Shown: positions 1,349 through 54,635 of the stretch, piece by piece
How the letters are laid out: each line of letters starts with the position of its first letter
Position numbering within the stretch: the first letter of the stretch is position 1
Assembly: GCA_002269645.1 (NCBI GenBank)
Contig: NIVC01000230.1
Location: forward strand, 62,001-126,000
Length of the DNA stretch: 64,000 nt
Direction: 5' to 3'
Source: Macrostomum lignano
Lineage: Eukaryota
Made by a program: the position numbers and the translations under genes
The notes under the pieces: generated by a model
Database searches by the model: none
What the model was told of the DNA's origin: nothing
The model's input: the letters and a program-made list of their open reading frames with translations, nothing else

Positions 1349-2175
1349 GCACGTCGAGTGGGCTCAGTTAGCATTACTTTATTAACATTTCTGTATCCTC
1401 AACGAGACTTAAAAAGAAGCAGTGCTTGGACTGTGAAGCCTACATTGTTTCGCATATTCGTACAAAACGCGTACATTTGTTAGGGCTTGGCCATTCCTTC
1501 TTTGGTCAGCTCGAGCGCTGCGTCAGAGCGTAAATTTATAAGCTATTTAGTTGCTGCCTAGCAGAACTCCAGCCACCAATACTATCTTCATTTTGAGAGC
1601 TCGCTATTCGAGCAAAATAGCATTTCAAATTTGGAGTTGTCTATCTATCTCGGCTCAAGAGAGTCGTTATCTAACTTGGGTAGTTATATAGCTAGAGCTA
1701 TATACTACACTGCACAGATATGTGCGCTGGCACACGCCATTTACGCTTCGGGCTATTTGCTAATTTGTAAATATGTACGCGCTTGAAATGCTCGCAATTG
1801 TTCAATAGAGAGAGGGAGAGACCAGGTGGGGAGAGACGTAGAGAAGAGATCAGCATAGTTACGCTGTATGTAATTCGCAGGGCGTTGAGGCGGGTGGACA
1901 ACCATTCCGCAGCGCGATGGTTTATAGTAATAAAATGCATACAAGTCATTTATAGAACCCCTGTTTTCTTTTTGAATGCATTGGGTCTGCGCCCTCTGCG
2001 TGCGGCTGTGTGCGCGATATCAGAGAGTACTCACTCTGCAATAGCGAGAAGAGGGGACTCTTTCGTGCGGCTATTTCCACAACTATTTTCTACTGCGCAT
2101 ATTTACCGTATACGTTGCTTTGCTGCGTCTGTTGCGGCAAAATCTTATTAAACTGCTACGCCAGACTTGCCCTTG

Positions 2176-5100
2176 ATGTTCAAATCGTTTCGACAGCGGA
2201 TGTCGCAGTCAGGCGGCTCCCGACATAGCGTCATAGACGATGCGACCACCGAACGAAGTCGTGTCAACTCAGTGGAACTCGGCGACGGCCTGGACAGTTT
2301 GGAGGGCGACAGCGACGATCCGTTCGACTCCAGCCTGGACCGACGGACCAGGAGTCATTGGCGATCGTCCAGCGAAGAACGAAGCAAAGTTCGCCGACTT
2401 CACAGCGCCTCATCGGCTGTCACAGTTGACAGAATGGACCCGGCGACGGCCAGCAACACCGCGGCCTCAGGCCAGCCGCTCGGTTTGAAGCAGCGCGCCA
2501 AAAATTTTCTCTTCCGTCGACGATCCTTCAGCTCGCTGGACACGCACAAGATCGACGGCAGGCCGGCCCGCATCGACCCCAAGCTGGTGAGCAACTACGC
2601 CAAAAGGCATCACAGCGACGACTGCATGCTGGACGCCGGAGATCGCGAACCGGACAGCCGGACAGGACAGAGTGGCAGCGCAACTGGCGGCGAAGGCGGG
2701 CTCGGCCTAGACAGCAGCGCGTCGGCCGGAAAGAAGAAAAGCAAATTCAGCCGGTCATTGAATTTGTTCACCTCAATGCGGCATCGATCCAGGTCGCGCG
2801 ATGCGACGCATCGAAAACCTGAGAGCGGCAGAGTATCCACTAGCGGCGGCTCCTCGGACGGTGGCTGGACTGACGCCAGCGGGCCAGTCGACAGCGGCAG
2901 CGCCATCGGCAGCGAAGGCCCCGGACAAAGTGCAACTCTTGGACGGCGCGGACACCGCAACAGCGAGCAGTACATGGCGCCACCCCCTACGCAGCAAAGG
3001 CAGCAGAGGCAGCCGCAGAGGCCCTACCAGCCGCCGTATCCGCCATACCAGCAACGTCAGGTAAGCAGTGCGAGCGCCCTGGCAACTAATCTGGATGAAA
3101 TTAGCGGCTTCTGTCTAGAGAGGCACCAGCTGAGAAGTCGCGTTGGCGAGGTGCTGGCGAGCTGGCCAGTCGTGCCGCTGGAGGCCGTGTCGCCTTGGCT
3201 GGTTGGCGGCAGCGGCCGCGGCGGTGGTGGCAAGAGTAAACGCCTGTCCATGGCCTTCAAAAAGGGATCGATCTTTGCATCGGCATCGCCGTCTTCCTCA
3301 TCCGGCCCGTCAACACCGTCGGGCTCGTTATCGTCCGCAGTGTTCAGCGGCGGCACTGGCGGCAGCAACTTGTCAAGCGTGAGCCAGTTCTCTGGCAGCA
3401 CGGCGGAGCAGCTCAACCTGCTGTGCCAGCAGTTCAATCAAGCTGTAACACTGCGCAAGAGCTACCGCGGCAAGGATCATCTTGCGGCGCGTCTTCCTCG
3501 ACGGTCTAGCGGTGAGCTAACGATTTTTTGTTATAACACAGGCTCATCAACATTAAAAAGTCGCCACCTTGGAGAGTGCGCAGTAAACTCCAGCTCAGTA
3601 TTGACTTTTCAGTGACTCAACTTGCGCTACGCAACGCAGAGTTGGGCTGGGTGAGAAGGGATTGGGAAGAGCGGAGAGGGAAGATTGGATGGATTGAAGC
3701 TTCCACCCGGTTTTCATTGTTTTTTCAAGCATTTTTAAATATCAAAATGATTGGCCAGCTGATAAACGCTGATAAACTCACTGGGGCAAAGGGTGGCGAC
3801 TTTTCAATTTTGCTGAGTATAGATTTGCATGTACATAGCATTTTACATGCTAGTTAGTAATTGCGTGCATTCGTCAGATAAAGTCTAGAGAAAAGACGTC
3901 AATGAAGATTTGGAAGAAAAAATTCGCTCAAGTTTACTGGTTTACCTGTCACAGTTGGTGTTGGATATATGCCACCTTGTGATTTAAACTTGCAATGTCC
4001 TTAAACTTCTTTGTTGGCGTATAAAGTATAAATTTTCCTGGGATGTTGAATGCATCTTGGCTAAGAAATTGAGCAATATTAAATGGATTAAATATTCGAA
4101 AAACATGATTTTCTGCAAAGGTCAAGCAGCTCTTTCGACCTGAAATGCATTGTAAGAATGCTAGAGAAAAACCTGACTGACTGAATTTCAATTCTGATAA
4201 AGATTGCATCACAACAAGATGAAAACAGTGCCAAAGAAATGCACACACGACTTGATTTAAATTGCGTAACCATATTTCTAACTTAAATTGAGACTGATAC
4301 TGGCTGACTGAGAAATTGATTATGTCATAACTTTTTACTCTAACCGATTTGCTATAAGAATTGAATTATAAGGGCCACAATTCATGCTCTCCAATCGACA
4401 AGAGATAGCCTAGATGCGATCAGACTGGACTGCTAATTCAGCGACCTGGGTTCGAATCTTAGTAGTGCAAAATAATTTTTTTATTAAAACATCTTAAAAA
4501 CAAAATGCTGAACATAAAAGAGCCACCATGTCAAACAAAAGTGGCACCATTTCAAACATTAAAGGCCACAATGTCAAACATATATGACTCCATGTCTAAC
4601 ATTAAAGAGCCACCATGTCGAACATAAAAGAGCCACTATGTCAAACATCAACGAGTCACCATGTCAAGCGTACATACATGACTTCATTTCAGACATTAAA
4701 GTGCCACCATGTCAAATATTAAAGAGCCACCATGTCAAGCGTATAAGTGACTCCATGTCAGACATTAAAGAGCCATCATTGCATACATTAAAGTGCCACC
4801 AGGTCAAACATTAAAAAGCCACAATGTCAAACACAAAACAGCTACCATGTCAAACATAAATGGGGTGCCTACTATCTTGGAGTGCTTGCTATCTGGAGAT
4901 GCGTGCTATCTGGGGGTGCTTGCTATCTGGGGGTGCTTGCTATCTGGGGGTGCTTGCTATCTGGGGGTGCTTGCTATCTGGGGGTGCTTGCTATCTAAGG
5001 GTGCTTGCTATTAGGTGGATGCTTGCTATCTGGGGTGCCTGCTATCTTGGAGTGCTTGCTATCTGGAGATGCGTGCTATCTGGGGGTGCTTGCTATCTGG

Positions 5101-7524
5101 GGGGGGATGCTTGCTATCTTGGGGGTTCTAGCTATCTGGGGGTGCTTGCTATTAGGTGGATGCTTGCTATCTGGGGTGCCTGCTATCTGAGGGTGCTTGC
5201 TATCTGGGGTGCTTGCTATCTAAGGGTGCTTGCTAACTGGGGGTGCTTGCTTTCTAAGGGTGCTTGCTATTAGGTGGATGCTTGCTATCTGGGTTGCCTG
5301 CTATCTGGGGGTGCTTGCTATCTGGAGATGCTTGCTATCTGGGGGTGCTTGCTATCTGGGGGTGCTTGCTATCTGGGGGTGCTTGCTATCTGGGGGTGCT
5401 TGCTATCTGGGGGTGCTTGCTTTCTAAGGGTGCTTGCTATTAGGTGGATGCTTGCGATCTTGGGGTGCTTGCTATTAGGTGGATGCTTTGCTATCTGGGG
5501 TGCCTGCTATCTGGGGGTGCTTGCTATCTGGAGATGCTTGCTATCTGGGGGTGCTTGCTATCTGGGGGTGCTTGCTATCTGGGGGTGCTTGCTATCTGGG
5601 GGTGCTTGCTATCTGGGGGTGCTTGCTATCTGGGGGTGCTTGCTATCTGGGGGGTTGCTTGCTGTCCTAGGATGTTTTCTTTTTGCATTGCACTTCATTT
5701 GAGCAGTTTTTCTATTGTCTATGTGAAGACTTTTTTGGCCGTCTTTTTGATACTTGTAGAGAGCCAGAGATTCTATCTAGATGCCCCCCATCGGGGGGGG
5801 CGAAGATTGCTAGTTAAAACTAAAAAGTGAGCAGTTGCTACAAAATCCGACCATGAAATAATTTGGGAATTGTTTTAGTCTGTTGGGTTGTTATCTTGTA
5901 TCGTTGGATATCGTTGTTGCGACTGTTGAAGCAAAGTCCCCTCATGTTCGATTCCACTCATGCGCAAGGTAAAATCACGATAAAGGCAGAGCCGCTATCA
6001 GAAAGACTATAACATTCAATCTGTTGCTCCATTTCAAAGGCCACTGGAGCAGTTCCTCCGGATCGAGCAGTCGAACAACAGCGGAATCAAGGTCTTTCAC
6101 CAAGCAGGCGTCGAACTCTACCACTGCATCAAAGGATTCCGCGTTGGAGTTAAAGTGAGTCACTACTCCGCTCTCCTATCGATAAATTTCTACCGCCAGT
6201 TCTAACTAATTTACTGCCAATAATGCTGCACTATAAACTCTTCAGCAACAACAAATTCAGGTTCGATGAGCAGGGCGGAAACAGTCGCCGACAGAGTCCT
6301 TCGCAAGCCTCGTCGTCGCCAAATGAGGCATTCAGCCATCAGCATCAGTATCAGCAGCAGCAGCATCATCAACCTCATCAGCATCCAGACTATGCGGCGC
6401 ACCATCGCTTCAACAATAATCGTCATCATCAGCAGTCACCCAGCTTTCTCTTTCCACCATCCGGACTGAGTTCTCAAACTTCTGAAGGTCAACGAAACTT
6501 GGCACAGTACCAGGTGAACCGTTCAATACAGCAGCAGCAGCAGCAGCAGCATCAACAAGCAACCGCTGGATCATCAACTGCCCATGGATACGAGAACATT
6601 CCGCCGAATTTTTCCCTCGTCGGCGTCTCAAATGAACCACACGATGAAGTTCCCGCACCGATGCCACCCAGACGATCGACAAGTCTTCGTCAGAGCAACG
6701 AATCCATCAACAGGCTCGCGGTGCCGCCAACTGCCGCTGACGTGGCGCAGATTTCGCCCACCTACCTGAACCACATGGTGCTGAGCGGCCCGCCCTCGTC
6801 AATGCCAGCAGCCTCTTCTTCGGCCTCCTCTCAGCCGATGACGACATCAATGACGAGTTCGGTGACCGGAACAAAGCCGCAGTTAGACCAGATCTCGGAG
6901 TCTCCCGACGACGAAGCGGCCGAGGCGACTGTTCCGTCAGAGTCGTCACCGCCGATGCCGCCGCCTCAGCTGCCGGAGCGGACCTCCCTGAGGCTGCCAT
7001 ACAGCAGACTGCCTCGACCAGCGTCCATTTCTGGCGACGCTCAGCAGCAGCCCGACAGCCCCGGCAACGGCAGCTATCAAGTGTGGCGCGGAGCCCTGCC
7101 CTATTCTACCCAGTCGCCGTCGTCCTCCTCGTCCTCGCTGGCGCAGACCTCATCGGCGGCGCCTCCCCGGCCTCGGCCGCCGCTGTTGCCAACCGCCGAC
7201 AGCGCCAAGATTGTGCGCGAGGCGCGCGCCAAGCTGAGCCAGCTTAATCGGCTCAGCGCCGAGCTGGCCAAGCGGCAACAGCTGCCGGCGCCGCCGCCGG
7301 CCGTCTGTCCGTTTGACGCCCTGTCGATGGGCCAGGTCTCGTCGTCGCCGATATCGGCGGTCCCAAGTGCAGCGGTGAGGTCGTCGCCGTCCAACGCAAA
7401 TGGAGCAGCGAATGTCGGAGACGCGGCTGCGGCGAGCTGGCGGAACAGTCTGCTTCTGCAAGACGAGCTGGCAGTGCGGGAATACCTGAAGGGTCTGACC
7501 ACGGCTTGCTCTACTGACTACTAG
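2176..7524 (+). CDS. 3-exon gene for a ~904-aa Ser/Gly/Gln/Pro-rich low-complexity protein of unknown function
   Basis: Exons 2176-3511, 6040-6154 and 6261-7524. Donors G|GTGAGC (3512) and AA|GTGAGT (6155); acceptors TTTCAAAG| (6039) and AAATTCAG| (6260). Phases 1 and 2 join in frame (RSSG-HWSSS...ELK-FDEQ). First ATG is 2176 (the ORF track start at 2167 is TTG). No domain recognised. Confidence 0.7.
4500..4860 (+). repeat. 23-bp tandem array (ATGTCAAACATTAAAGAGCCACC) inside Helitron copy 1
   Basis: Degenerate repeats visible; reverse complement of the 32800-34260 array. Confidence 0.85.
4860..5660 (+). repeat. 16-18-bp G-rich tandem array (GGGTGCTTGCTATCTGG) inside Helitron copy 1
   Basis: Directly visible; source of the spurious GCLLSGGACYLGVLAIW ORFs. 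Confidence 0.95.
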
Positions 7525-28858: not shown

Positions 28859-30636
28859 TTAGGCCTACTGTAGCCGTGTAGGGGGTAGGCCTAAATTATG
28901 AAATTAAATCAACACAATGTATTTCAAAACTATATTGCTGGCCTACATGCGCTTGACACATTCTTGAGTGTCAGTGTAACTATTAGGGTATAACATTATA
29001 CATTAACAATTGGATCCTAGCCTAACAATAGTTCTTGGTTCAAGATAGTTCAACTAGGATCTAGACTATAGAAAGCTAGTAAATAGGCCTAGGCCTATTC
29101 AAAGCAGCAAAAATACAAAAAATGCTAGCAGTAGGCCTAGCAGACAAAAAAAGCAGCAGATGTAATGCCTGCACACTTTGTTTTGCATTATTTTAAATAA
29201 GTTAGTTGCTAAAACTGGAAATTTATTTCTTTAGGCCTATATATATATAGCTTCTAAGATACTAAGTTATAGATAGTGTTCCGCCATAGCTGTAGCCCAT
29301 TTTGCGGATGGTATGGTGTATGCCTAAAAATTCTGGCATATACTTGATTTCCGTGGCATACACCAGCATACATTTCTTACCTGTGTACAGTGTGGCATAC
29401 AGTGTGGTGTATGGCGACTGGCGTAGAAATTAATATAAAGAATTTTTTCATGCTTTTTTCTGTGTTAAGTTATTTCAAAAACCATTTTTTCTGCTACTAT
29501 TTTCTCATTTACCAATCATTTTAATTACCGGAATTGTCACGACAATTGTCATATTGTTATAAATTTTTATAGTTTAAATTTAAATTAAAATATTTGTTTA
29601 TTTTTTTACTGTTTTTTATGTTGGCATACATTTAAAATCTGTTGGCGTACAATTGAAAATTCAATAAAAATGTGTCCGGCGTACACAGAAAACCTTCTGC
29701 AATATGGGTTGTAGCTATAGCTATGGTGCCTATGGCACCTAAGTAAAATAGGTGCCTATGGCAGCTATGGATATGCCTACGATAGCTAGCTGCTCTTATG
29801 GCTACGACTACGGAAATATAGTAGTTGTTGTCACATTCTGTAGATTCCCATAACCATAGTTATTAATGTTAAAAATTAACAAAATATTAGAAACAGGTAA
29901 AGTAAAACAAAGATACTTTTATTAAACTGTATTATCAACTTAGAAACATGTAAAATATACCTAAAAAGTACATTAAAACACTAGCAAATTCTAATTTTTA
30001 TTAATGTGAAAAAGTTCAGCATTAGTACTTTCAATAACAATTAAGTATTGTTGCTCTGAAAAAAAGACGAAATATAATCTTACAAGGGCAATCAAGTATT
30101 TCTTTTATTTTCTAACTTAATTTGCAGTTGTTTAAGCACCAGGTTATCTTCTTGATTCAAAATATTTTGTTTTCTAGACCTTTTGTTAAAACTATGGCTA
30201 TAGCTATGGGAACTATGGGAATATAGTAATATTGGGGTTGGGGTCCCTACGGCTACAGAATATGGAGAATTAGAATAAGCCATAGTTTTGCTTACGGCTA
30301 CAGCTATGGTACATGGACCCTCCTTACAGTGGAACACTAGTTATAAATATACTATTATTTTGCTTTATTTATACAGAATAGGTCAATGGGCTCAATATCA
30401 TAATGGGTTATACCAAATTTGTCAATAGTTAAAACAAGCTAAGCAAATTCATTAACAACAAGACAAGACTTATTTAAAGTTATTTCTTAATGCAATAATG
30501 TAACTTTTTGTAATTCAATGATTAAACTATTGCTAAAGACTTTAACATGATTTCATGAATGTATAATTCTAGATGCTACTGTATATTATATGACTCAAAA
30601 TTGAACAAATTGGGCAATCAATACTATGTATACTAC

Positions 30637-31105
30637 ACTCCAGATCATGTAGTATATGCCCAAAAATTTGGGCGTGCATTGGCCTTGCATGCCAAAATTA
30701 GGCATGCAGAGTTGGCATGCATCACTCCCAAGAAAATAGTATATGTGCACACCTGGCATAACTTTATAAAATCACGCGTAAGAGTTATTGTAAAATAGAA
30801 AAAATAAAATCTTCATTTTAAGTGTAAATTTCAAGCTTTCCAGTTTTTTTAAGCTTGTAAAAATATTTAAACTAATATTTGTGTGTATCAATTTTCTGCT
30901 ATAAATGAAATTGCCAAAAAAGCATAAAAATTAACCAAATTAGTTGCTAATAAGGGTCTATTATGCAGTTTAAAACAATCATTTATTGTTGCAATGTAAA
31001 AAAGGTCATGGGCATATTTTGAGAATGGGCATGCAAAAAATTTTTTGGCATGCATTTGTTATTATTCAATTTTTGTTTGGGCGTGCACCCATCATGATCT
31101 AGACT
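30637..31105. mobile_element. ~470-bp MITE (copy A)
   Basis: Ends ACTCCAGATCATG / CATGATCTAGACT. Full-length inverted homology with 36747-37209. Confidence 0.7.
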
Positions 31106-32069
31106 ATGGTATGTATATAATACCATATTGTACAAAGGCCTAGTTAGAGTTTCCTAATGCAAGTATATCAAGAGTTAGTCTATCGGGGTATATTAGTTTA
31201 TTTGCTGCATAGGCCTATGCTTTATTATACTTTATTGCATCTTCGACTGAAGCAGGTCATTTTAATTCAAATTTAATTTCAATTTTTGTTTATCTCCTTA
31301 ACCATTAACAAGGTTTTGTTGGAGTTTGACTTTAAGTTTCAAAATGTATACAAAAATAGTTCCAGTAAATTTATTTGCGGGTTAAAAATCTATGGGTTTT
31401 AACAGCTTATAAAAAATAAAAATAAAATAATAACTATTCACCTTTATAATTGTATATGTATCTAGTATATTATCAGGTAACCAAATTTGTCAATAATGCA
31501 TAGTAAGATAAACCATGAAATTAGATGTTGACAAATTTGGTGGCACTTATTATAACAGTCTATGGCCTATGGGCTTCTATATTTATAATATATTGGATAA
31601 AACAGGCATTTCTAGCAGTTTTTGAAGCCTTCTATGAAATAAAGTAATTGAAGTATTATATAATGGTACTATAGCAATGTGGCTAAAACTTAAATTTAGG
31701 TTGCTCTAAATTATTCAAAGGTCTTTTTATACCTCTGCATACATGGCTTTTAGAAATTCTATAGTTTTATCCAAGTTTTATCTTTTCTGTTTCACCCAAT
31801 ATACTATCTTTGTCTTATTTATATATAGGGATGCTTATATTAATAGAATAGGCCTAAAATTTAAAAAGTATTGTGTTTATCTAATATCAATAATAAAAAA
31901 TCCTATCAAATGATAGCAAAAATATTGAAAATATTGGTATCCTATATATATAAGTACACAATAATAAAACACAAGTTTTCTAACAAAGCTAGGCCTATAA
32001 CATGATAAATTTTATTTTATTTTATTTAACCTATATTTTATTAACTTTTAAATACAAAATAGCAAAGTA

Positions 32070-34831
32070 CTAGCAATCTTCGCCCCCCGTTGGGGGACAT
32101 CCGTATAGAATCTCTGTTCTCTACAAGTAATAAGAAGATAGCCAAATAAAGCTTTCACAAAGAAAACAGACAAACTACTCAAATGAAGTGCAATGCAAAA
32201 AGAAATCATCCCAAGACAGCAAGCATCACCCAGATTGCAAGCATCCCCCGGATAGCAAGCATCCCCAGATAGCAAGCATCACCCAAATAGCAAGCATCCC
32301 TCAGATAGCAAGCATCCCCAGATAGCAAGCATCCCCCAGATAGCAAGCATCCCCAGATAGCAAGCATCCCCCAGATAGCAAGCATCCCCCAGATAGCAAG
32401 CATCCCCCAGATAGCAAGCATCCCCAGATAGCAAGCATCCCCTAGATAGCAAGCATCCCCCAGATAGCAAGCATCCCCAGATAGCAAGCATCCCCCAGAT
32501 TGCAAGCATCCCCCAGATAGCAAGCATCCCCAGATAGCAAGCATCCCCCAGATAGCAAGCATCCCCAGATAGCAAGCATCCCCAGATAGCAAGCATCCCC
32601 CAGATAGCAAGCATCCCCCAGATAGCAAGCATCCCCAGATAGCAAGCATCCCCCAGATTGCAAGCATCCCCCAGATAGCAAGCATCCCCCAGATAGCAAG
32701 CATCCCCAGATAGCAAGCATCCCCCAGATTGCAAGCATCCCCCAGATAGCAAGCATCCCCCAGACAATAAGTAGCTAGTGCGACATTTCCTTAGCATTAT
32801 AGTGGCTCCTTTAAAATTCGCTCACTTTTACGTTTGAAATTGTGTATCTTTTATGTTTGACATGGTGGCTCTTTTATGTTTGAAATGAAGTCACTTATAT
32901 GTTTGACATGGTGAATCTTTTAAATGTTTTACAGGTTGGCTCTTTAATTTTCAACATGGTGGCTCTTTTATGTTCAACATAGTGGCTCCTTTATGTTCGA
33001 CATGGTGGCTCTTTTATATTAGACATGGTGGCTCTTTTATGTTCTACATGGTGGTTCTTTTATGTTCGACATGGTGGCTCTCTAATGTTTGACATGGTGG
33101 CTCCTTAATGTTTGACATAGTGGCTCTTTAATATTCAACAAAGTGGCTCTTTAATGTTTGACATAATGACTTTTTAATGTTCAAAATGGTGGCTCTTTAA
33201 TGTTTGACATGGTGGCTCTTTAATGTTTGACATGGTGGCTCTTTAATGTTCAACATAGGGGCTCTTTAATGTTCGACACGATGGCACTTTAATGTTTGAC
33301 ATGGTGGCTCTTTAATGTTTGACATGGTAGCTCTTTAATGTTCGACACGATGGCACTTTAATGTTTGACATGGTGGTTCTTTAATGTTCGACATGGTGGC
33401 TCTTTAATGTTCGAAATGTTTTTTTTGTTTTACAGTGGCTCTTTAATGTTCAACATGGTGGCTCTTTTTTGTTTGAAATAAAGTCTCTTATATGTTTGAC
33501 ATGGTGGCTCTTAAATGTTCGGCATGATGGCTCTTTAATGTTCGACATGAAGTCACGTATATGTTTGATATAGAGTCACATATATGTTTTACATAGTGGC
33601 TCTTTTATGTTTAACATGGTGGCTCTTTTATGTTTGAAATGGTGGCTCTTTAATGTTTGACATGGTGGCTCTTTAATGTTTGACATAGTGGCTCCTTTAT
33701 GTTTGACATGGTGGCTCTTTTATATTAGACATGGTGGCTCTTTAATGTTTGACATGGTGGCTCTTTACTGTTTGACATAGTGGCTCTTTAATATTCAACA
33801 AAGTGGCTCTTTAATGTTTGACATGGTGGCTCTTTAATGTTTGACATGGTGGCTCTTTAATGTTTGACATGGTGGCTCTTTAATGTTCAACATAGTGGCT
33901 CTTTAATGTTCGACACGATGGCACTTTAATGTTTGACATGGGGGCTCTTTAATGTTTGACATGGTGGCTCCATTATGTTTACATGGTGGCTCTTTAATTT
34001 TTGACATTGTGGCCCTTTAATGTTCGACATGGTGGTTCTTTAATGTTCGACATGGAGTCACATATATGCTCGACATGGTGGCTCTTTAATGTTTGACATT
34101 GTGGCCTTTTAATGTTCGACATGGTGGCTCTTTGATGTTTGACATGGTGGCTCTTTAATGTTCGACATGGTGGCTCTTTAATTTTTGACATTGTGGCTCT
34201 TTAATGTTCGACATGGAGTCGCGTATATGCTTGGCATGGTGGCCCTTTTATGTTTAGCATTTTGTGTTTTGAAGGTGTTTTAACAAAAAAATTATTTTGC
34301 TCTACTAAGATTCGAACCCAGGTCACTACATTACCAGTCCAATCTGCTCGCATCTAGGCTATCTCTTTTTAATCTGAGAACATGAACTGTGGCCCTTTGA
34401 ATTCAATTCTTACAGCAAGTCAATTGGAGTAAAAAGTTATGACATAATCAATTTCTCGGTCAGCCAGTATCAGTCCCAATTTAAGTTAGCAATATGGTTA
34501 CGCAATTTCTATCAAGTAGTGTGTGCAATTCTTTGACACTGTTTTCAACTTTTTGTGATGCAATCTTTATCACAATCGGAATTCAGCCAGTCAGTTTTTT
34601 CTCTAGCATTCTTACAATGCATTTCAAGTCAAAAATTTGGCTTGACCTTTGCATAAAAGCATGTTTTTCGAATATTTAATCCCTTTAACATTGAGCAATT
34701 TCTTAGCCAAGAAGCATGTACCGTCCCAGGAAAATTTCTGATCGAATGGTGCAAGTTTGAAGAAAATCGATTGAGCCGTTTTTCTGAAATCCATCTCACA
34801 GAGACACACATTTCATTTTTAGTATATAGGA
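32070..34831 (-). mobile_element. Complete non-autonomous Helitron (family A, copy 2), 2762 bp
   Basis: The minus strand reads A|TCCTATATACTAAAAATGAAATGTG… (5' TC at 34831) and ends with hairpin GTCCCCCAACGGGGGGCG, AAGATTG, CTAG|T (32070). Insertion between A and T without a TSD is the Helitron signature. Internal 23-bp (32800-34260) and 17-bp (32215-32765) arrays. Confidence 0.85.
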
Positions 34832-35959: not shown

Positions 35960-36746
35960 AGTTGCTATATATTTAGTTCTAAAGTAGTAACTACTTTTAG
36001 ATCTCTAGGCTCTTGGTCCATTTAAAAATCAGCATATATTTGAATGACTATTTGCCTTTTAAAGGTAATTTGTGTTTTAATTTAATAAAATTGATAAACA
36101 AATATATAGATTCCTATAGAATATTTATATCTATTATTATAACTTACAAGTATATTAGCAATAGCTTATATTTTGCTCTACCTTGTCCCAAAAAGGCTTT
36201 TAATCAGTCAGTTTAATTGAAGTACATTTACTATGACTATGTAAAAAAGTGTTTATAACTCAAAAATTAAATAAAATGTAGGCATTGAAATAGGAGCATA
36301 AATGTTGATATTACTAATATAAACAAAATAAATGACAATATACATCAATATTATGGATCTATAGATAAAATTAGCAAGAAATGCATTAGTTACAAGTTTT
36401 ACAACAATTCTATAGTTTTCCAACTGATTTCAACAGTTATTAAAAGCAAGGAGGCTCCATAAATTTCATTGTCATGACTATAAAAAATATTTAGAAGCTT
36501 GATTTGTATTGTAGCTTTTCAATTTTTTGGCTACCTTTTTTGTATGCCATACTTAAAATGGGTGAAAAGGAAGGACCAATAGGATTGAGTTGGAGAAGAT
36601 GGTTGTCAACCTTAATTTTCATACTGGGCAATTTGTCAATCCCTGCAGCTTCTAACCTTCTTCCCTTAGTTTGACTTTGGTATTATTTTGAACTTGTTCA
36701 ATAGCAAAGGTGACAAAATTTTCAATTGAGTTGTTAGAAGTGAGAA

Positions 36747-37209
36747 ATCTGGATCATGCTGGGTCCATGCCCAAACAAAATTGAATAATTAGAAATGCAT
36801 GCTAAAAAAATTGAGTGCATGCATTATTCTTTAAACTACGCTGGTGTTGCAACAATAAATGACCTTTTATAAATTGCATAATGGACTGTTTTTGGCAGAT
36901 AATTTGGTTAATTTTTCTGCTTATTCCACAATACTATTCACAATGGAAAATCGATACACAAAAAATTGTTTCAATGCTTTATTACAAGCTTATAAAACCT
37001 GGAAAACTTGAAATATATGCTTAAAATGAACATTTTTTAATCTTTTTTTACTTCACAATAATTTCAACTTCAATTCTACTTCTACTTAGTAGTGTATACA
37101 CATACACTATTTTCTTTGGAGTGATACACTTAACTGTGCATGCCTACTTTTGGCAGGCAAGGCAAATGCATGCCCAAATTTTTGGGGGTATACTACATGA
37201 TCTGGAGTG
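36747..37209. mobile_element. ~465-bp MITE (copy B, inverted relative to 30637-31105)
   Basis: Ends TCTGGATCATG / CATGATCTGGAGT. The reverse complement of 37090-37209 aligns with 30637-30760. Confidence 0.7.
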
Positions 37210-37643
37210 TGGGTAAGAAAGTGTATTAGCCCTCTTACAAGCGTGTATAGCTATTCTCTTCATCATTAAACTGTTACAGACTGTCTAAAATTGTGCTAAC
37301 AGATAGCAAATAGTTTAAGCTTTTATTTAAGTCATCACATTTAAACTAATCTTTTAAACAATCATATAAAACTATAAAAGACCTTGTTATCTTAATTGGA
37401 AGACAAATTTTGATTTTTGTAACTAGGCATGTTGAAAATGTTTTTACCTATGCTTAATTCTCGAGTCTTAATCCCAATCATGAAAGACAAGTCTTTAGCA
37501 TAAATAATGTTTCTACATTTTGTCATAAGTCATTCTAGTCATTTTAGTTGTCTTATTTTTAATAGAAAGCAGTCAGTACTTTACAAACTTGTCTGCTTTC
37601 TACTCTAGTATTTTCTAACTTGCACTTTGTTGAAATTTTTCAG

Positions 37644-39584
37644 GAGGCGCAAAATAATCAAGTAGATTTTGCTGATCTACTAGACTCCAATGCCTCCAAA
37701 GGGTCCATTGCTGTAGCCTGCCTGAATTCAGAATCGGCTGCTTATCCAATTGACCTGCTGCTCCAGTTGAAAAATCGGATTGCTTATTTGGCTCTGGTTG
37801 ATGGAGCCTGCAATCTGTTCTATGATAATCAGATGCTATGCAAAGAATTTGAGCCTCAGTTGGTTACTGGAGACTTTGATTCAGTTAGGCCTGGTGAGGG
37901 TTTGGTTGGCTTTTCTTGACTAATTCTAACTATCCAAAGGTCTGGTAGGAATAGGATTAAGCTGCATATTGAAAATTTATAATTTAATTAGAAACATACC
38001 CTGAAGTTCCTGAACATTTGCCTGAAAAGGTGACTGGTACTTGAAGCTTTGATTGAGGTGACTGAAATCCCTGAAAATTTGACTGAAAGAATACCTGAAC
38101 TACCTGAAGATTGGGTAGGAAAATACCTGAACTTCCCAGAGATTTAACTGTGAAAATTCTTTGAACTGCCTGATGAACTGACTATGAAAATGCCTAATCC
38201 AACTGCAGATTTGACTTTGAAAATACCTAAACTACCTAAAGATTTGATTATAAATACCTAATAAGCTACCTAAAGATTTTATTATGAAAATACCTAAACT
38301 ACCCAAAGATTTGATTATAAAAATACCTAATAAGCTACCTAAAGATTTTATTATGAAAATACCTGAAATACCTAAAGATTTGATTATGAAATCGCCTGAA
38401 CTACCCGAAAATTTGAATGTGAAAATACCTGAACTACCTAAAGATTTGATTATGAAAATACCTGAACCTACCTAAAGATTTGATTATAAAAAAGCCTAAT
38501 AAGCTACCTAAAGATTTTTTTGAGAAAATACCTGAACTACCTAAAGATTTGATTATAAAATACCTAATAAGCTGCCTAAAGATTTTATTATGAAAATACC
38601 TGAACTACCTAAAGATTTGATTATAAAAATACCTAATAAGCTACCAAAAGATTTTATTATGAAGATACCTAAACTACCTAAAGATTTGATTATAAAAATA
38701 CCTAATAAGCTACCTAAAGATTTTATTATGAAAATACCTGAACTACCTAAAGATTTGATTATAAAATACCTAATAAGCTACCTAAAGATTTTATTATGAA
38801 AATACCTGAACTACCTAAAGATTTGATTATAAAAATACCTAATAAGCTACCTAAAGATTTGATTATGAAATCGCCTGAACTACCTGAAGATTTGAATGTG
38901 AAAATACCTGAACTACCTGAAGATTTGATTGTGAAAATACCTGAACTACCTAAAGATTTGATTATGAAAATACCTGAACCTACATAAATATTTGATTATG
39001 AAATTGCCTGAACTGCCCGAAGAGTTGACCACAAAATACCTGAAGTTATTTCAATCGCATCACCCGCAGAAGTGCTGCAGTATTATAAAGACCTACCCAG
39101 CACAGAAGTGATCCCAACGCCAGATCAGGACAGAACAGACTTTGACAAGTGTCTCTCCTGTCTCCTGGATTCTCAACGTTTGAATTTAAACAAAGAAATT
39201 GCCTGCATATTGGTGCTTGGCGGCCTAGGCGGCAGGGTAGATCACACGTTCGGCAATTTGCACACACTTGTGAAATGGTCTAGCCAGTGCAAGCCTAGGA
39301 TCTACTTTGCTACTCAGCATGATCTGTGGGTATGCCTGCCGCCGTGTCAAGAGTCTGTTGAGTGCCGCCTGTTGCGGCCGAGGCAGGGCAAATACGCCGG
39401 TCTGATCCCGTTAGATCAGCCTTGTCTGAACGTTCACACTAGCGGGTTGAAATGGAATCTTACTGGCGACACTCTCAGCTTCACTGGTTTAGTATCAACG
39501 TCTAACGAAGCTGTTGACGAGTTAATAATAGCTAGATGGAGTGGCGGTCACCTGTTGATTACGGTTACTTATGAGTTGACCTAG
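37644..39584 (+). CDS. TPK1: Thiamine pyrophosphokinase (2 visible exons; initiator Met not encoded in them)
   Basis: Exons 37644-37893 (acceptor TTTTTCAG|, donor G|GTGAGG) and 39070-39584 (acceptor CCCGCAG|); 765 nt, in frame. Motifs: LVDGACN, LVTGDFDSV, PDQDRTDFDKCL, LGGLGGRVDHTFGN, TSGLKWNL, VSTSNE. Confidence 0.93.
37995..39045 (+). repeat. 33/36-bp minisatellite filling the TPK1 intron
   Basis: Unit GAAAATACCTGAACTACCTAAAGATTTGATTAT plus a 36-bp variant; degenerate at both ends. Confidence 0.9.
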
Positions 39585-39844
39585 TTTTAGTTATTGTTTA
39601 TTACAATTTACAGAGGAAGATATGTTTTGGAAACAAATATATATGTTGCGAACATATAGTTGGATAGAAAGTCGGTAGAATAAGACTTGTTCTTTAGCCC
39701 ATACCGTTGATCTGCACTTTCAACACAAAAATATTTTTCACTTCTCACAAGTTCCTCGTTAATTTTGCTGATGTCTTGCATATTTGCTGTGGTTAGTTTT
39801 TTTAGAATACTTATACTTTTACTTAGTCTTAGACATATAACAGG

Positions 39845-40197
39845 AATACCCCTGGATACAGACTCTGGAATACCCCTAGATACAGACTCATGAATACCCC
39901 TAGATACAGACTCTGGAATACCCCTGGATACAGACTCTAGAATACCCCTGGTTACAGAGTCTGGAATACCCCTAATTACAGAGTCTTGAATACCCCTAAT
40001 TACAGAGTCTGGAATACTCCTAGTTACAGACTCTGGAATACCCCTGGTTACAGACTCTGGAATACCCCTGGTTACAGAGTCTGGAATACCCCTAGTTACA
40101 GAGTCTGGAATAGTCCTAGTTACAGACTCTGGAATACCCCTAATTACAGACTCTGGAATACCCCTAATTACAGACTCTGGAATACTCCTGGTTACCC
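39845..40197. repeat. 24-bp minisatellite (GGAATACCCCTAGTTACAGACTCT)
   Basis: Directly visible between TPK1 and SAP30BP. Confidence 0.93.
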
Positions 40198-40844: not shown

Positions 40845-40930
40845 ACACACAGACAGAAACACACAGGCAGACAGAAACACGCAGACAGGCAGACAGACAG
40901 ACAGACAGACAGACAGATAGACAGACAGAC

Positions 40931-41029
<99 letters not shown>

Positions 41030-41050
41030 AACAGACACAGACAGGCAGAA

Positions 41051-41090
<40 letters not shown>
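40845..41090. repeat. (GACA)n microsatellite immediately upstream of SAP30BP
   Basis: Directly visible. Confidence 0.97.
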
Positions 41091-41185
41091 TGACTCTCCG
41101 CTCCGCTCTCCCGCAGCTCCTGCAGGCCAGCACTCGCTAAGCACAGGAATCCAACAGAAAGCCTCATCAGCAGCCTCAGCCGGCC

Positions 41186-42574
41186 ATGTCCCGCCAAACG
41201 ATGCCGCCTCCCACCGGCTCCCTGCCGCTGCTCACCGCCTACGATGATGACGAAGAAGAGGATGAAGAAACTCAAGCGGAGGCTGCAGCAGCAGAATCTC
41301 CACAGGCTACTGCCAGTAGTGATGACAACAATTTCAACGATGATGCAATGGGAGAAGGTGAGGTCGGACCCGAACAGCAGGTGGGAAATTCTCCCTCAGC
41401 TGTCATCAAAGAAGCAGCGGACGAAGACGACGCTCAGATCTGGAGCGGGCCGCAGCCAAAACGGCAGCGCTCCAGCAGCAGCGGCCGCGGAGACGGCGGC
41501 GCCGGCGGGATGACCTTCGACATCTCCGACGATGAGGGCGGCGGAGCTCACAACGATGACGAAGAAGGCGACAGCAGCCAGGATGCTGATGCTGCTCCTC
41601 CACTTTCGGCTCCATCAGTCAAATCGGATTTGAAAAGTTCTCAAGACCAGCCGCGATTAGCTAAAGTGAGCAGTTTGGTCAACTACGGCTTGGGGCCGAA
41701 TGAGAGCGACTCGGAGAAGGAGGAAAATGATGAAGGTGGCAGTGATGCCGATCGGGATGTTTCTGATGATGAGGCTGAGGCGCCAGTCGATGCAGAGGAT
41801 GCCGAGGTTGCTAATGACAATCCCGACGCAAAACAGACTGGCTTGTCGACTCCGCCGGAGACTTCCAGTGCAGCCGCTGAAGTCGGAGTTGCCGACAGGA
41901 AAATTTCCGACAATGTTGACGTTGACGACATGGCCCGAGCCAATGCCAGGGCTAAAGCCGACGAGCTGCTGCTGTCGCTTGACGCTTCTTCCTCATCGTC
42001 GGCAACTCCGCTCGTGCAGTCCTCGCCGCTGAGTCTGCCTCCGCCGCCGAAGGAGCCGCCAAATCGTGAGGTGCAGGAGAAGGTGAACAAGCTGCTGCAG
42101 ATGAAGCGTCAGGGCGTCGGTATCAGCATGATGAACCGCATCACAAACAATAAGAAGTATAGAAATCCGTGCATGTACGAGAAGTTTATTATCTACCAGG
42201 GTATTGACGATAAAGGCACCAACTTCCATCCCAGCGTGTTCGATCCCTACATCTGGGACAAGCTCAGCTATTACGATGCGCTGCTTCAAGCGCAGGTGGA
42301 AGCGGAATCCAAGCGGGTACGGGCGACAGGCAATCGGGATCAGCAGCAGCAGCAGCAGCAGCAGCCTCCGCCATTGATGCAGATGGCTTCCAGGCGGCCC
42401 GCAGCTGCCGCTGGTGACGCGGCTTCGGTGGCAGCCGCGATGCTGGCCAGACGGTCCAGCAAGTGGGACAGCGGTGGGGGCGGAGGTGGAAGCGCACCCA
42501 CTGGAGCCGCCGGGGCAGCTGCGAATCCTTCATCGTCCACTGGTGTGGGAGCATTTATTCGTAGGAAGCCTTGA
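41186..42574 (+). CDS. SAP30BP: SAP30-binding protein / HCNGP-family protein, single coding exon, 462 aa
   Basis: Acidic N-terminus, then LPPPP.EP…VQEKV.KL…M..I…K.YRNP..YEK.I….IDD.GTNF…VFDP..W…SYYDAL..AQ, and C-terminal RRSSKWD, characteristic of the HCNGP family. Confidence 0.9.

Positions 42575-44444: not shown

Positions 44445-54635
<10,191 letters not shown>

What the first reader, a model, noticed from the sequence alone, without database searches (positions are those of the whole stretch)
37630..37700. TPK1 has no ATG of its own and starts at a phase-0 splice acceptor: candidate for an AUG donated by a spliced leader
Seen: the first TPK1 exon begins right after TTTTTCAG (37643) with GAG GCG CAA (E-A-Q). 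The first in-frame ATG lies past the conserved VACLN and DGA motifs. By comparison with the human TPK1 N-terminus, only about a Met is missing. The upstream ~9 kb is AT-rich and transposon-filled, with no coding-like exon. Established: flatworm spliced leaders end in AUG, and this AUG can initiate translation of recipient mRNAs. Inference: SL-AUG|GAG would give M-E-A-Q…, in frame.
Basis: partly seen in the sequence, partly recalled or inferred. Interest (0 to 1): 0.75.

Follow-up and report, generated by a model that had tools for sequence, protein, structure and literature searches.

The report
TPK1 start codon from spliced leader
In this flatworm (Macrostomum lignano) the thiamine pyrophosphokinase gene has no start codon of its own and most likely gets it from the trans-spliced leader, a mechanism known in flatworms since 2006, so this is one more example and not a new phenomenon.

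Summary
The window is Macrostomum lignano DNA. A two-exon TPK1 gene (37644-37893 and 39070-39584, + strand) begins directly after a canonical acceptor (CTAAC branch site, T-tract, CAG at 37641-43). It has no in-frame ATG before residue 64, which lies past the invariant N28 and D53-G54. Its first residue aligns with the initiator Met of other animal TPK1s.

The M. lignano spliced leader is published as a 35-nt sequence ending in ATG. The published trans-acceptor motif [T/C]TNCAG fits this site, so SL-AUG|GAG would read M-E-A-Q in frame. All three database models of this gene lack a Met. No upstream exon was annotated or could be found. The two consensus donors within 2.6 kb upstream cannot supply an in-frame ATG.

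I could not obtain RNA evidence, so a distant cis exon ending in ATG is not excluded. The mechanism itself is established: Cheng et al. 2006 found more than 40 Schistosoma cDNAs that need the SL AUG, and Macrostomum genome papers call the SL's final ATG a start codon. Schistosome and tapeworm TPK1 orthologues keep a genome-encoded ATG, so the dependence seems specific to the Macrostomum lineage.

Verdict: real, well supported, a new member of a known kind, modest interest.

The parts
37373..37380 (+). TATAAAAG, a TATA-box-like element 271 nt upstream of the acceptor. It is a possible core promoter that would give an outron of about 240 nt (speculative).
   Evidence: Pattern scan. The surrounding 37260-37459 is 97-100% identical in the homeologous locus L001. 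No transcription-start data were available.
37615..37619 (+). Branch-point-like CTAAC. The branch A at 37618 is 25 nt upstream of the acceptor G, and there is no AG between it and the acceptor.
   Evidence: Read directly. Assigning it as a branch site is an inference from the general consensus.
37620..37643 (+). T-rich tract and 3' splice acceptor ttgaaatttttCAG (AG at 37642-37643), the proposed SL trans-splice acceptor.
   Evidence: TTTCAG fits the M. lignano trans-acceptor motif [T/C]TNCAG (PMC8629364). The sequence is identical in homeolog L001.
37644..37893 (+). TPK1 coding exon 1 (250 nt). It starts in phase 0 with GAG GCG CAA (E-A-Q), has no initiator ATG, and ends in phase 1 before the donor GTGAGG.
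   Evidence: Our 254-residue reading is identical to residues 4-257 of UniProt A0A1I8H8P1.
37833..37835 (+). The first and only in-frame ATG of exon 1 (residue 64). Starting here would delete invariant N28, D53 and G54.
   Evidence: The first ATG of the exon (37690) is in the +1 frame and opens an 8-codon ORF (hand translation).
37894..39069 (+). Intron 1 (GTGAGG...CACCCGCAG), largely filled by a 33/69-nt tandem array at 38090-39028.
39070..39584 (+). TPK1 coding exon 2, up to and including the stop TAG at 39582-39584. It holds the rest of the catalytic domain and the thiamine-binding domain.
   Evidence: tblastn against human TPK1, E = 1e-25. Assembly. Pfam PF04263 and PF04265 are on record for the near-identical P0001.

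Best explanation
This is the Macrostomum lignano thiamine pyrophosphokinase (TPK1) gene. The gene does not encode its own initiator codon. The primary transcript probably starts a few hundred nucleotides upstream, possibly downstream of the TATAAAAG at 37373. It carries an outron that ends at the acceptor CAG at 37641-37643. The spliceosome joins the 35-nt spliced leader, which ends ...UUGCAUG, to G37644. The mature mRNA then reads ...UUGC-AUG-GAG-GCG-CAA. The SL's terminal AUG becomes the first AUG of the mRNA, in frame, with G at +4. It initiates a 255-residue protein, M-EAQNNQVDF...YELT. Shown: the gene structure, the lack of any genomic in-frame ATG, N-terminal completeness apart from the Met, the organism, and the SL sequence and acceptor motif (both from the literature). 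Inferred: that the SL is actually joined at 37644 and that ribosomes start at its AUG.
For: (1) The acceptor is immediately followed by codon 2 of a conserved TPK1 ORF, with no Met in the upstream open frame. (2) E1 aligns with Met1 of 12 other TPK1s. Invariant N28, D53 and G54 precede the only in-frame ATG. (3) The organism is M. lignano. (4) Its SL ends in ATG, about 30-39% of its genes are trans-spliced, and the acceptor motif [T/C]TNCAG fits. (5) All three public models lack a Met. Two UniProt entries start IFQEAQ, reading 9 nt into the acceptor tract. GenBank PAA61383.1 is flagged 'partial' and starts 21 nt inside the exon. The Mlig_3_7 annotation was RNA-seq guided, with spliced mapping but end-to-end alignment. 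That procedure would recover a cis junction but lose SL-junction reads. (6) No gene is annotated in the 10 kb upstream of the homeologous copy, and no coding-like stretch lies upstream in the window. (7) The two consensus GT[AG]AG donors within 2.6 kb upstream cannot deliver an in-frame ATG. (8) Precedent: the flatworm SL AUG is in frame in 28% of S. mansoni trans-spliced mRNAs and is required by more than 40 cDNAs (Cheng 2006). A Macrostomum genome paper calls the SL's final ATG a translation start codon.
Against: There is no RNA evidence. No transcript-derived protein is in the collections. A search for the SL-exon junction in JGI metagenomes found nothing, as expected. Paper supplements do not list the gene. 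The GenBank transcript model does not start exactly at the acceptor, so the published pipeline apparently recorded no SL peak for that copy. Low expression or multi-mapping between identical homeologs could explain this. In parasitic flatworms 3' acceptors are extensively shared between cis- and trans-splicing, so an acceptor alone does not tell the two apart. Fifty-one ATG|GT sites lie in the 17.6 kb upstream. One of them, ATG|GTATGT at 31106, is conserved in the homeolog.
Confidence: 0.75

Rival explanations
1. This is ordinary cis-splicing. A short, unannotated 5' exon far upstream ends in ATG, or carries a longer N-terminal extension in phase 0. The candidate is ATG|GTATGT at 31106-31114. 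It is spliced to the acceptor at 37643.
For: ATG|GT sites exist upstream (51 in 17.6 kb). The 31106 site is retained in homeolog L001 at 5079. Cis and trans acceptors look alike and are often shared in flatworms. Some TPK1 homologues elsewhere carry N-terminal extensions (P0005, P0007, P0010).
Against: None of the 51 sites has the dominant M. lignano donor GT[G/A]AG. Most lie in a 23-nt tandem array. The 31106 region is only about 88% identical between homeologs, no better than its surroundings. It would need a 6.5-kb intron, against a mean of 1.1-1.4 kb. RNA-seq-guided annotation found no such junction and left the CDS partial. The protein's N-terminus is already complete against homologues.
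Confidence: 0.14
2. Translation starts inside the gene, at the in-frame AUG at 37833 (residue 64) or at a non-AUG codon, whatever the 5' end of the mRNA is.
For: ATG 37833 has A at -3. Non-AUG initiation is known in SL-bearing taxa.
Against: Starting at residue 64 removes invariant N28, D53 and G54 and the first strand of the catalytic domain. An out-of-frame AUG at 37690 precedes it. The 63 codons before it stay open and are identical in the homeolog.
Confidence: 0.04
3. The copy is a 5'-truncated or decaying pseudogene that has lost its start.
For: M. lignano is a hidden polyploid with many duplicated genes, so redundant copies could decay.
Against: At least two genomic copies share the same structure. 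They show 3 differences in 765 coding nt, against about 3% in flanking DNA. Splice sites are intact, there is no frameshift or stop, and all family-invariant residues are present. No other TPK1 from this species appeared in two exhaustive searches.
Confidence: 0.04

Closest known systems
Flatworm mRNAs that take their initiator Met from the 3'-terminal AUG of the spliced leader (Cheng, Cohen, Ndegwa and Davis 2006, J Biol Chem 281:733; Schistosoma mansoni)
   Same: The SL ends in AUG. The recipient exon starts in phase 0 at the acceptor. There is no genomic in-frame AUG ahead of the conserved domain. The predicted N-terminus matches homologues once the SL Met is added.
   Different: The species is different: a free-living macrostomorph rather than a parasitic trematode. 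The gene is different. For this locus SL addition and initiation at the SL AUG are inferred, not demonstrated.
slORFs: open reading frames created by SL addition, in nematodes, ascidians and euglenozoa (slORFfinder, PMC9851317)
   Same: The start codon is contributed by the leader, and the ORF is invisible to genome-only annotation.
   Different: Most slORFs use non-AUG NUG codons inside the leader and are new or alternative ORFs. Here a canonical AUG would start the main, conserved ORF of a housekeeping enzyme.
TPK1 orthologues of parasitic flatworms (Schistosoma turkestanicum, S. japonicum, Hymenolepis diminuta)
   Same: Same enzyme family and a similarly short N-terminus. S. turkestanicum has an acceptor-like TTGCAG 6 nt upstream of its ATG, which would also be in frame with an SL AUG.
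   Different: They encode their own ATG in the genome. The M. lignano gene does not.

Membership tests
SL-AUG-initiated flatworm mRNA (Cheng et al. 2006 class) | The organism has an SL RNA whose leader ends in AUG | tested here: met
   The organism was identified as Macrostomum lignano. The SL sequence ends ...TTGCATG (PMC8629364; PMC10468722). No SL RNA gene lies in the window itself.
SL-AUG-initiated flatworm mRNA (Cheng et al. 2006 class) | The first coding exon begins at a 3' splice acceptor of the trans-splice type | tested here: met
   TTTCAG|G, with a CTAAC branch site 25 nt upstream and no intervening AG. It fits [T/C]TNCAG. The motif does not exclude cis use.
SL-AUG-initiated flatworm mRNA (Cheng et al. 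2006 class) | The SL AUG is in frame with the conserved ORF, with no stop in between | tested here: met
   The exon starts in phase 0 with GAG. AUG|GAG GCG CAA gives MEAQ....
SL-AUG-initiated flatworm mRNA (Cheng et al. 2006 class) | No genome-encoded in-frame AUG can give a complete protein | tested here: met
   There is no Met between the upstream stop (37563-65) and residue 64. Public models are all Met-less. A distant cis exon is not excluded.
SL-AUG-initiated flatworm mRNA (Cheng et al. 2006 class) | The SL is physically joined to the mRNA at this acceptor | not testable with these tools
   No M. lignano transcript or read data could be reached.
SL-AUG-initiated flatworm mRNA (Cheng et al. 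2006 class) | Translation initiates at the SL AUG | not testable with these tools
   This needs ribosome profiling, N-terminal proteomics or a reporter assay.
Thiamine pyrophosphokinase (TPK1; Pfam PF04263 and PF04265) | Catalytic and thiamine-binding domains with the family-invariant residues | tested here: met
   Exon 1 hits PF04263. Both domains are on record for the 99%-identical P0001. tblastn against human TPK1 gives 1e-25. N28, D53, G54, G76, D77, D79, S80, Q103 and D107 are invariant in alignment A2.

The most novel reading that the evidence does not exclude
TPK1 lost its own ATG in the Macrostomum lineage, while schistosomes and tapeworms kept theirs. Synthesis of the only enzyme that makes thiamine diphosphate would then depend strictly on trans-splicing. 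This locus would be one of a sizeable, so far uncounted class of M. lignano gene models deposited as 5'-partial for the same reason. For these genes SL addition would be an obligatory coding step rather than a 5'-UTR exchange.
Probability: 0.35. Interest if true: 0.35.

Novelty: new member of a known kind. Interest (0 to 1): 0.25.

Why it matters
The main value is practical. It explains why all three public models of this gene are 5'-incomplete, and it gives the likely true N-terminus (M-EAQNNQ...). Genome-only annotation of Macrostomum, and pipelines that trim the SL including its ATG, will consistently truncate such genes. It also gives a clean, conserved housekeeping enzyme as a test case for SL-AUG initiation in a flatworm that can be made transgenic. 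The comparison with parasitic flatworms hints that dependence on the SL AUG can arise gene by gene. It does not reveal a new mechanism.

Tried and rejected
- **Protein search with exon 1 alone:** no hit. The full-length query was needed.
- **Rfam scan of the window:** nothing found, and no SL RNA gene.
- **Transcript-derived proteins:** none exist in the 5.8-billion or the 1.84-billion protein collections. The next-best hit is 37-38% identical.
- **Exact search for the SL-exon junction in JGI metagenome contigs:** 0 hits.
- **Paper supplements and full text, searched for Mlig029653 and TPK1:** nothing. Wasik 2015 is not held.
- **Comparison of the two homeologous loci:** uninformative for the acceptor, because 150 nt upstream and all of exon 1 are identical.
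- **Donor GTAAG at 37213:** rejected. It lies in a repeat insertion absent from the homeolog, and the nearest ATG (37197) would join out of frame and hit a stop.
- **Donor GTGAG at 36740:** rejected. Its phase-0 upstream frame has no ATG before a stop (plus hand translation).
- **Pfam scan of whole upstream frames:** I used the ORF listing instead.

Full report
**What is there**

Positions 37600-37650 read ctactctagtattttCTAACttgcactttgttgaaatttttCAG|GAGGCGCAAAAT. From 37644 the + strand translates without a stop to EAQNNQVDFADLLDSNASKGSIAVACLNSESAAYPIDLLLQLKNRIAYLALVDGACNLFYDNQMLCKEFEPQLVTGDFDSVRP. A donor G|GTGAGG follows at 37893/37894.

This exon hits Pfam TPK_catalytic and the human and mouse TPK1 structures 3s4y, 9hjc and 1ig3. 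A tblastn with human TPK1 finds the rest of the protein in one block at 39069-39506 (E = 1e-25). Joining 37644-37893 to 39070-39584 gives a 254-codon ORF ending in TAG. The 1.2-kb intron is mostly a 33/69-nt tandem array.

**The missing start**

The open frame can be followed upstream of the acceptor to a stop just before 37566. That stretch (KAVSTLQTCLLSTLVFSNLHFVEIFQ) holds no Met. Exon 1 contains five ATGs. Only the one at 37833 (residue 64) is in frame. The first, at 37690, is in the +1 frame and opens an 8-codon ORF.

In an alignment with 12 TPK1s from other animals, E1 falls in the column of their Met1. Invariant N28, D53 and G54 all precede residue 64. A functional protein therefore needs an initiator immediately 5' of 37644.

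**Organism**

The full-length query retrieves UniProt A0A1I8JJF6 (Macrostomum lignano) at 99% identity and full coverage. Its 90% cluster also holds A0A1I8H8P1. That entry is identical to the window's protein, apart from a three-residue prefix. The cluster also holds GenBank PAA61383.1, 'BOX15_Mlig029653g2, partial'.

None of the three models starts with Met. The two UniProt entries begin IFQEAQ, which means the model runs 9 nt into the acceptor tract (ATT TTT CAG). The GenBank CDS begins at DFADLL, 21 nt inside the exon.

The next-best proteins in both large libraries are only 37-38% identical. No other Macrostomum sequence and no transcript-derived sequence was available.

**The spliced leader**

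Ustyantsev and Berezikov 2021 (PMC8629364) give the single M. lignano SL as CGGTCTCTTACTGCGAAGACTCAATTTATTGCATG. They report about 30% of genes as trans-spliced and [T/C]TNCAG as the top motif at trans-acceptors. The site here is TTTCAG.

Because the SL ends in ATG and the exon starts in phase 0, the junction reads ...TTGC ATG GAG GCG CAA, that is M-E-A-Q, with G at +4.

Wudarski et al. 2017 (PMC5730564) report 38.8% of genes as trans-spliced. They state that SL sequences were trimmed and that reads were mapped end-to-end. That procedure recovers cis junctions but loses reads spanning an SL junction. This fits a transcript model that stops short of the acceptor and a CDS flagged partial. That link is my inference.

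Wiberg et al. [quoted passage not shown]

The general mechanism was established by Cheng et al. 2006. As summarised in PMC9851317 and PMC12582326, all reported flatworm SLs end in AUG. [quoted passage not shown]

**Is there an upstream cis exon?**

The homeologous locus from assembly Mlig_3_7 (NIVC01002037.1, locus L001) has no annotated gene in the 10 kb upstream of TPK1. It shares the downstream HCNGP-like and GPD2 genes with the window.

In the window, 28.4-37.6 kb is AT-rich. One + frame has 221 stops in 3081 codons. No stop-free stretch of 100 codons or more exists outside tandem arrays.

ATG|GT occurs 51 times in the 17.6 kb upstream, mostly inside a 23-nt array. None has the dominant donor GT[G/A]AG.

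Only two GT[AG]AG donors lie within 2.6 kb upstream:
- The donor at 37213 sits in a repeat insertion of about 220 bp that L001 lacks. It would join the nearest ATG out of frame.
- The donor at 36740 has no ATG in its phase-0 frame before a stop (read).

A cis exon is therefore unsupported, but it is not excluded.

**Orthologues**

A profile search retrieved TPK1 from Hymenolepis diminuta, Schistosoma turkestanicum, S. japonicum, S. mekongi and Trichobilharzia regenti. The genomic loci of the first two show a genome-encoded ATG directly before codon 2. The S. japonicum model even extends to an earlier in-frame Met.

Lacking an ATG is therefore not a general flatworm TPK1 feature. It belongs to the Macrostomum lineage, at least as far as sampled here.

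S. turkestanicum has TTGCAG|AGAGAA just before its ATG. An SL AUG joined there would also be in frame. I did not follow this up.

**Is the gene alive?**

The window copy and L001 differ at 3 of 765 coding positions (2 non-synonymous). Flanking DNA differs by about 3%. Splice sites are identical, and all family-invariant residues are present. A pseudogene is unlikely.

**What could not be done**

No RNA evidence was reachable. The junction search in JGI metagenomes returned nothing. Supplements and full text hold no entry for the gene.

**Verdict**

Cis-splicing from a distant ATG-ending exon is the main rival (about 0.14).

The mechanism is well known in flatworms and already acknowledged for Macrostomum. 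The finding is a new member of a known kind. Its value lies mainly in correcting the annotation and in offering a convenient test case. Interest is 0.25.

Noticed in passing
window 37015-37233 (and 30635-30852, opposite strand): A short interspersed repeat of about 220 bp (MITE-like, with no ORF) is inserted 410-630 nt upstream of the TPK1 acceptor in this copy. It is absent at the same place in the homeologous locus L001. A 79%-identical inverted copy lies at 30635-30852, and a relative lies at L001 4725-4838.
   Followed up: partly
window 38090-39028, 39843-40195, 32207-32764, 32825-34255, 40845-41094: The TPK1 intron, its 3' flank and the upstream region are packed with minisatellite-like tandem arrays (units of 33/69, 24, 18, 23 and 4 nt; the 23-mer has about 62 copies). 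Translated ORFs suggest that the 18-mer array at 32.2-32.8 kb is related, in reverse orientation, to arrays at 4860-5827.
   Followed up: no
window 41141-42571 and about 44445-50900 (+ strand): The downstream neighbours on the same strand are an HCNGP-like protein gene and a mitochondrial glycerol-3-phosphate dehydrogenase (DAO, DAO_C and EF-hand domains). The HCNGP-like ORF has a genome-encoded ATG that fits the 462-residue annotated product, and the ORF before the DAO exons has an ATG at codon 2. The same gene order is present in NIVC01002037.1 (L001).
   Followed up: partly
L002 1489-1503 (Schistosoma turkestanicum OX103972.1): The schistosome TPK1 has an acceptor-like TTGCAG 6 nt upstream of its own ATG (cag|AGAGAA ATG). 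A trans-spliced SL AUG there would be in frame and would add M-R-E ahead of the annotated Met.
   Followed up: no
L001 10001 (GenBank PAA61383.1); UniProt A0A1I8JJF6 and A0A1I8H8P1: The public gene models of this gene are all 5'-incomplete. Two read 9 nt into the intron/outron (IFQ prefix) and one starts 21 nt inside exon 1. This is probably a systematic annotation artefact for SL-AUG-dependent genes.
   Followed up: partly
window 2152-3612, 6154-7521 (+ strand): Two long GC-rich ORFs (487 and 456 codons, GC about 0.6) have no Pfam match. They are probably exons of uncharacterised M. lignano genes.
   Followed up: no
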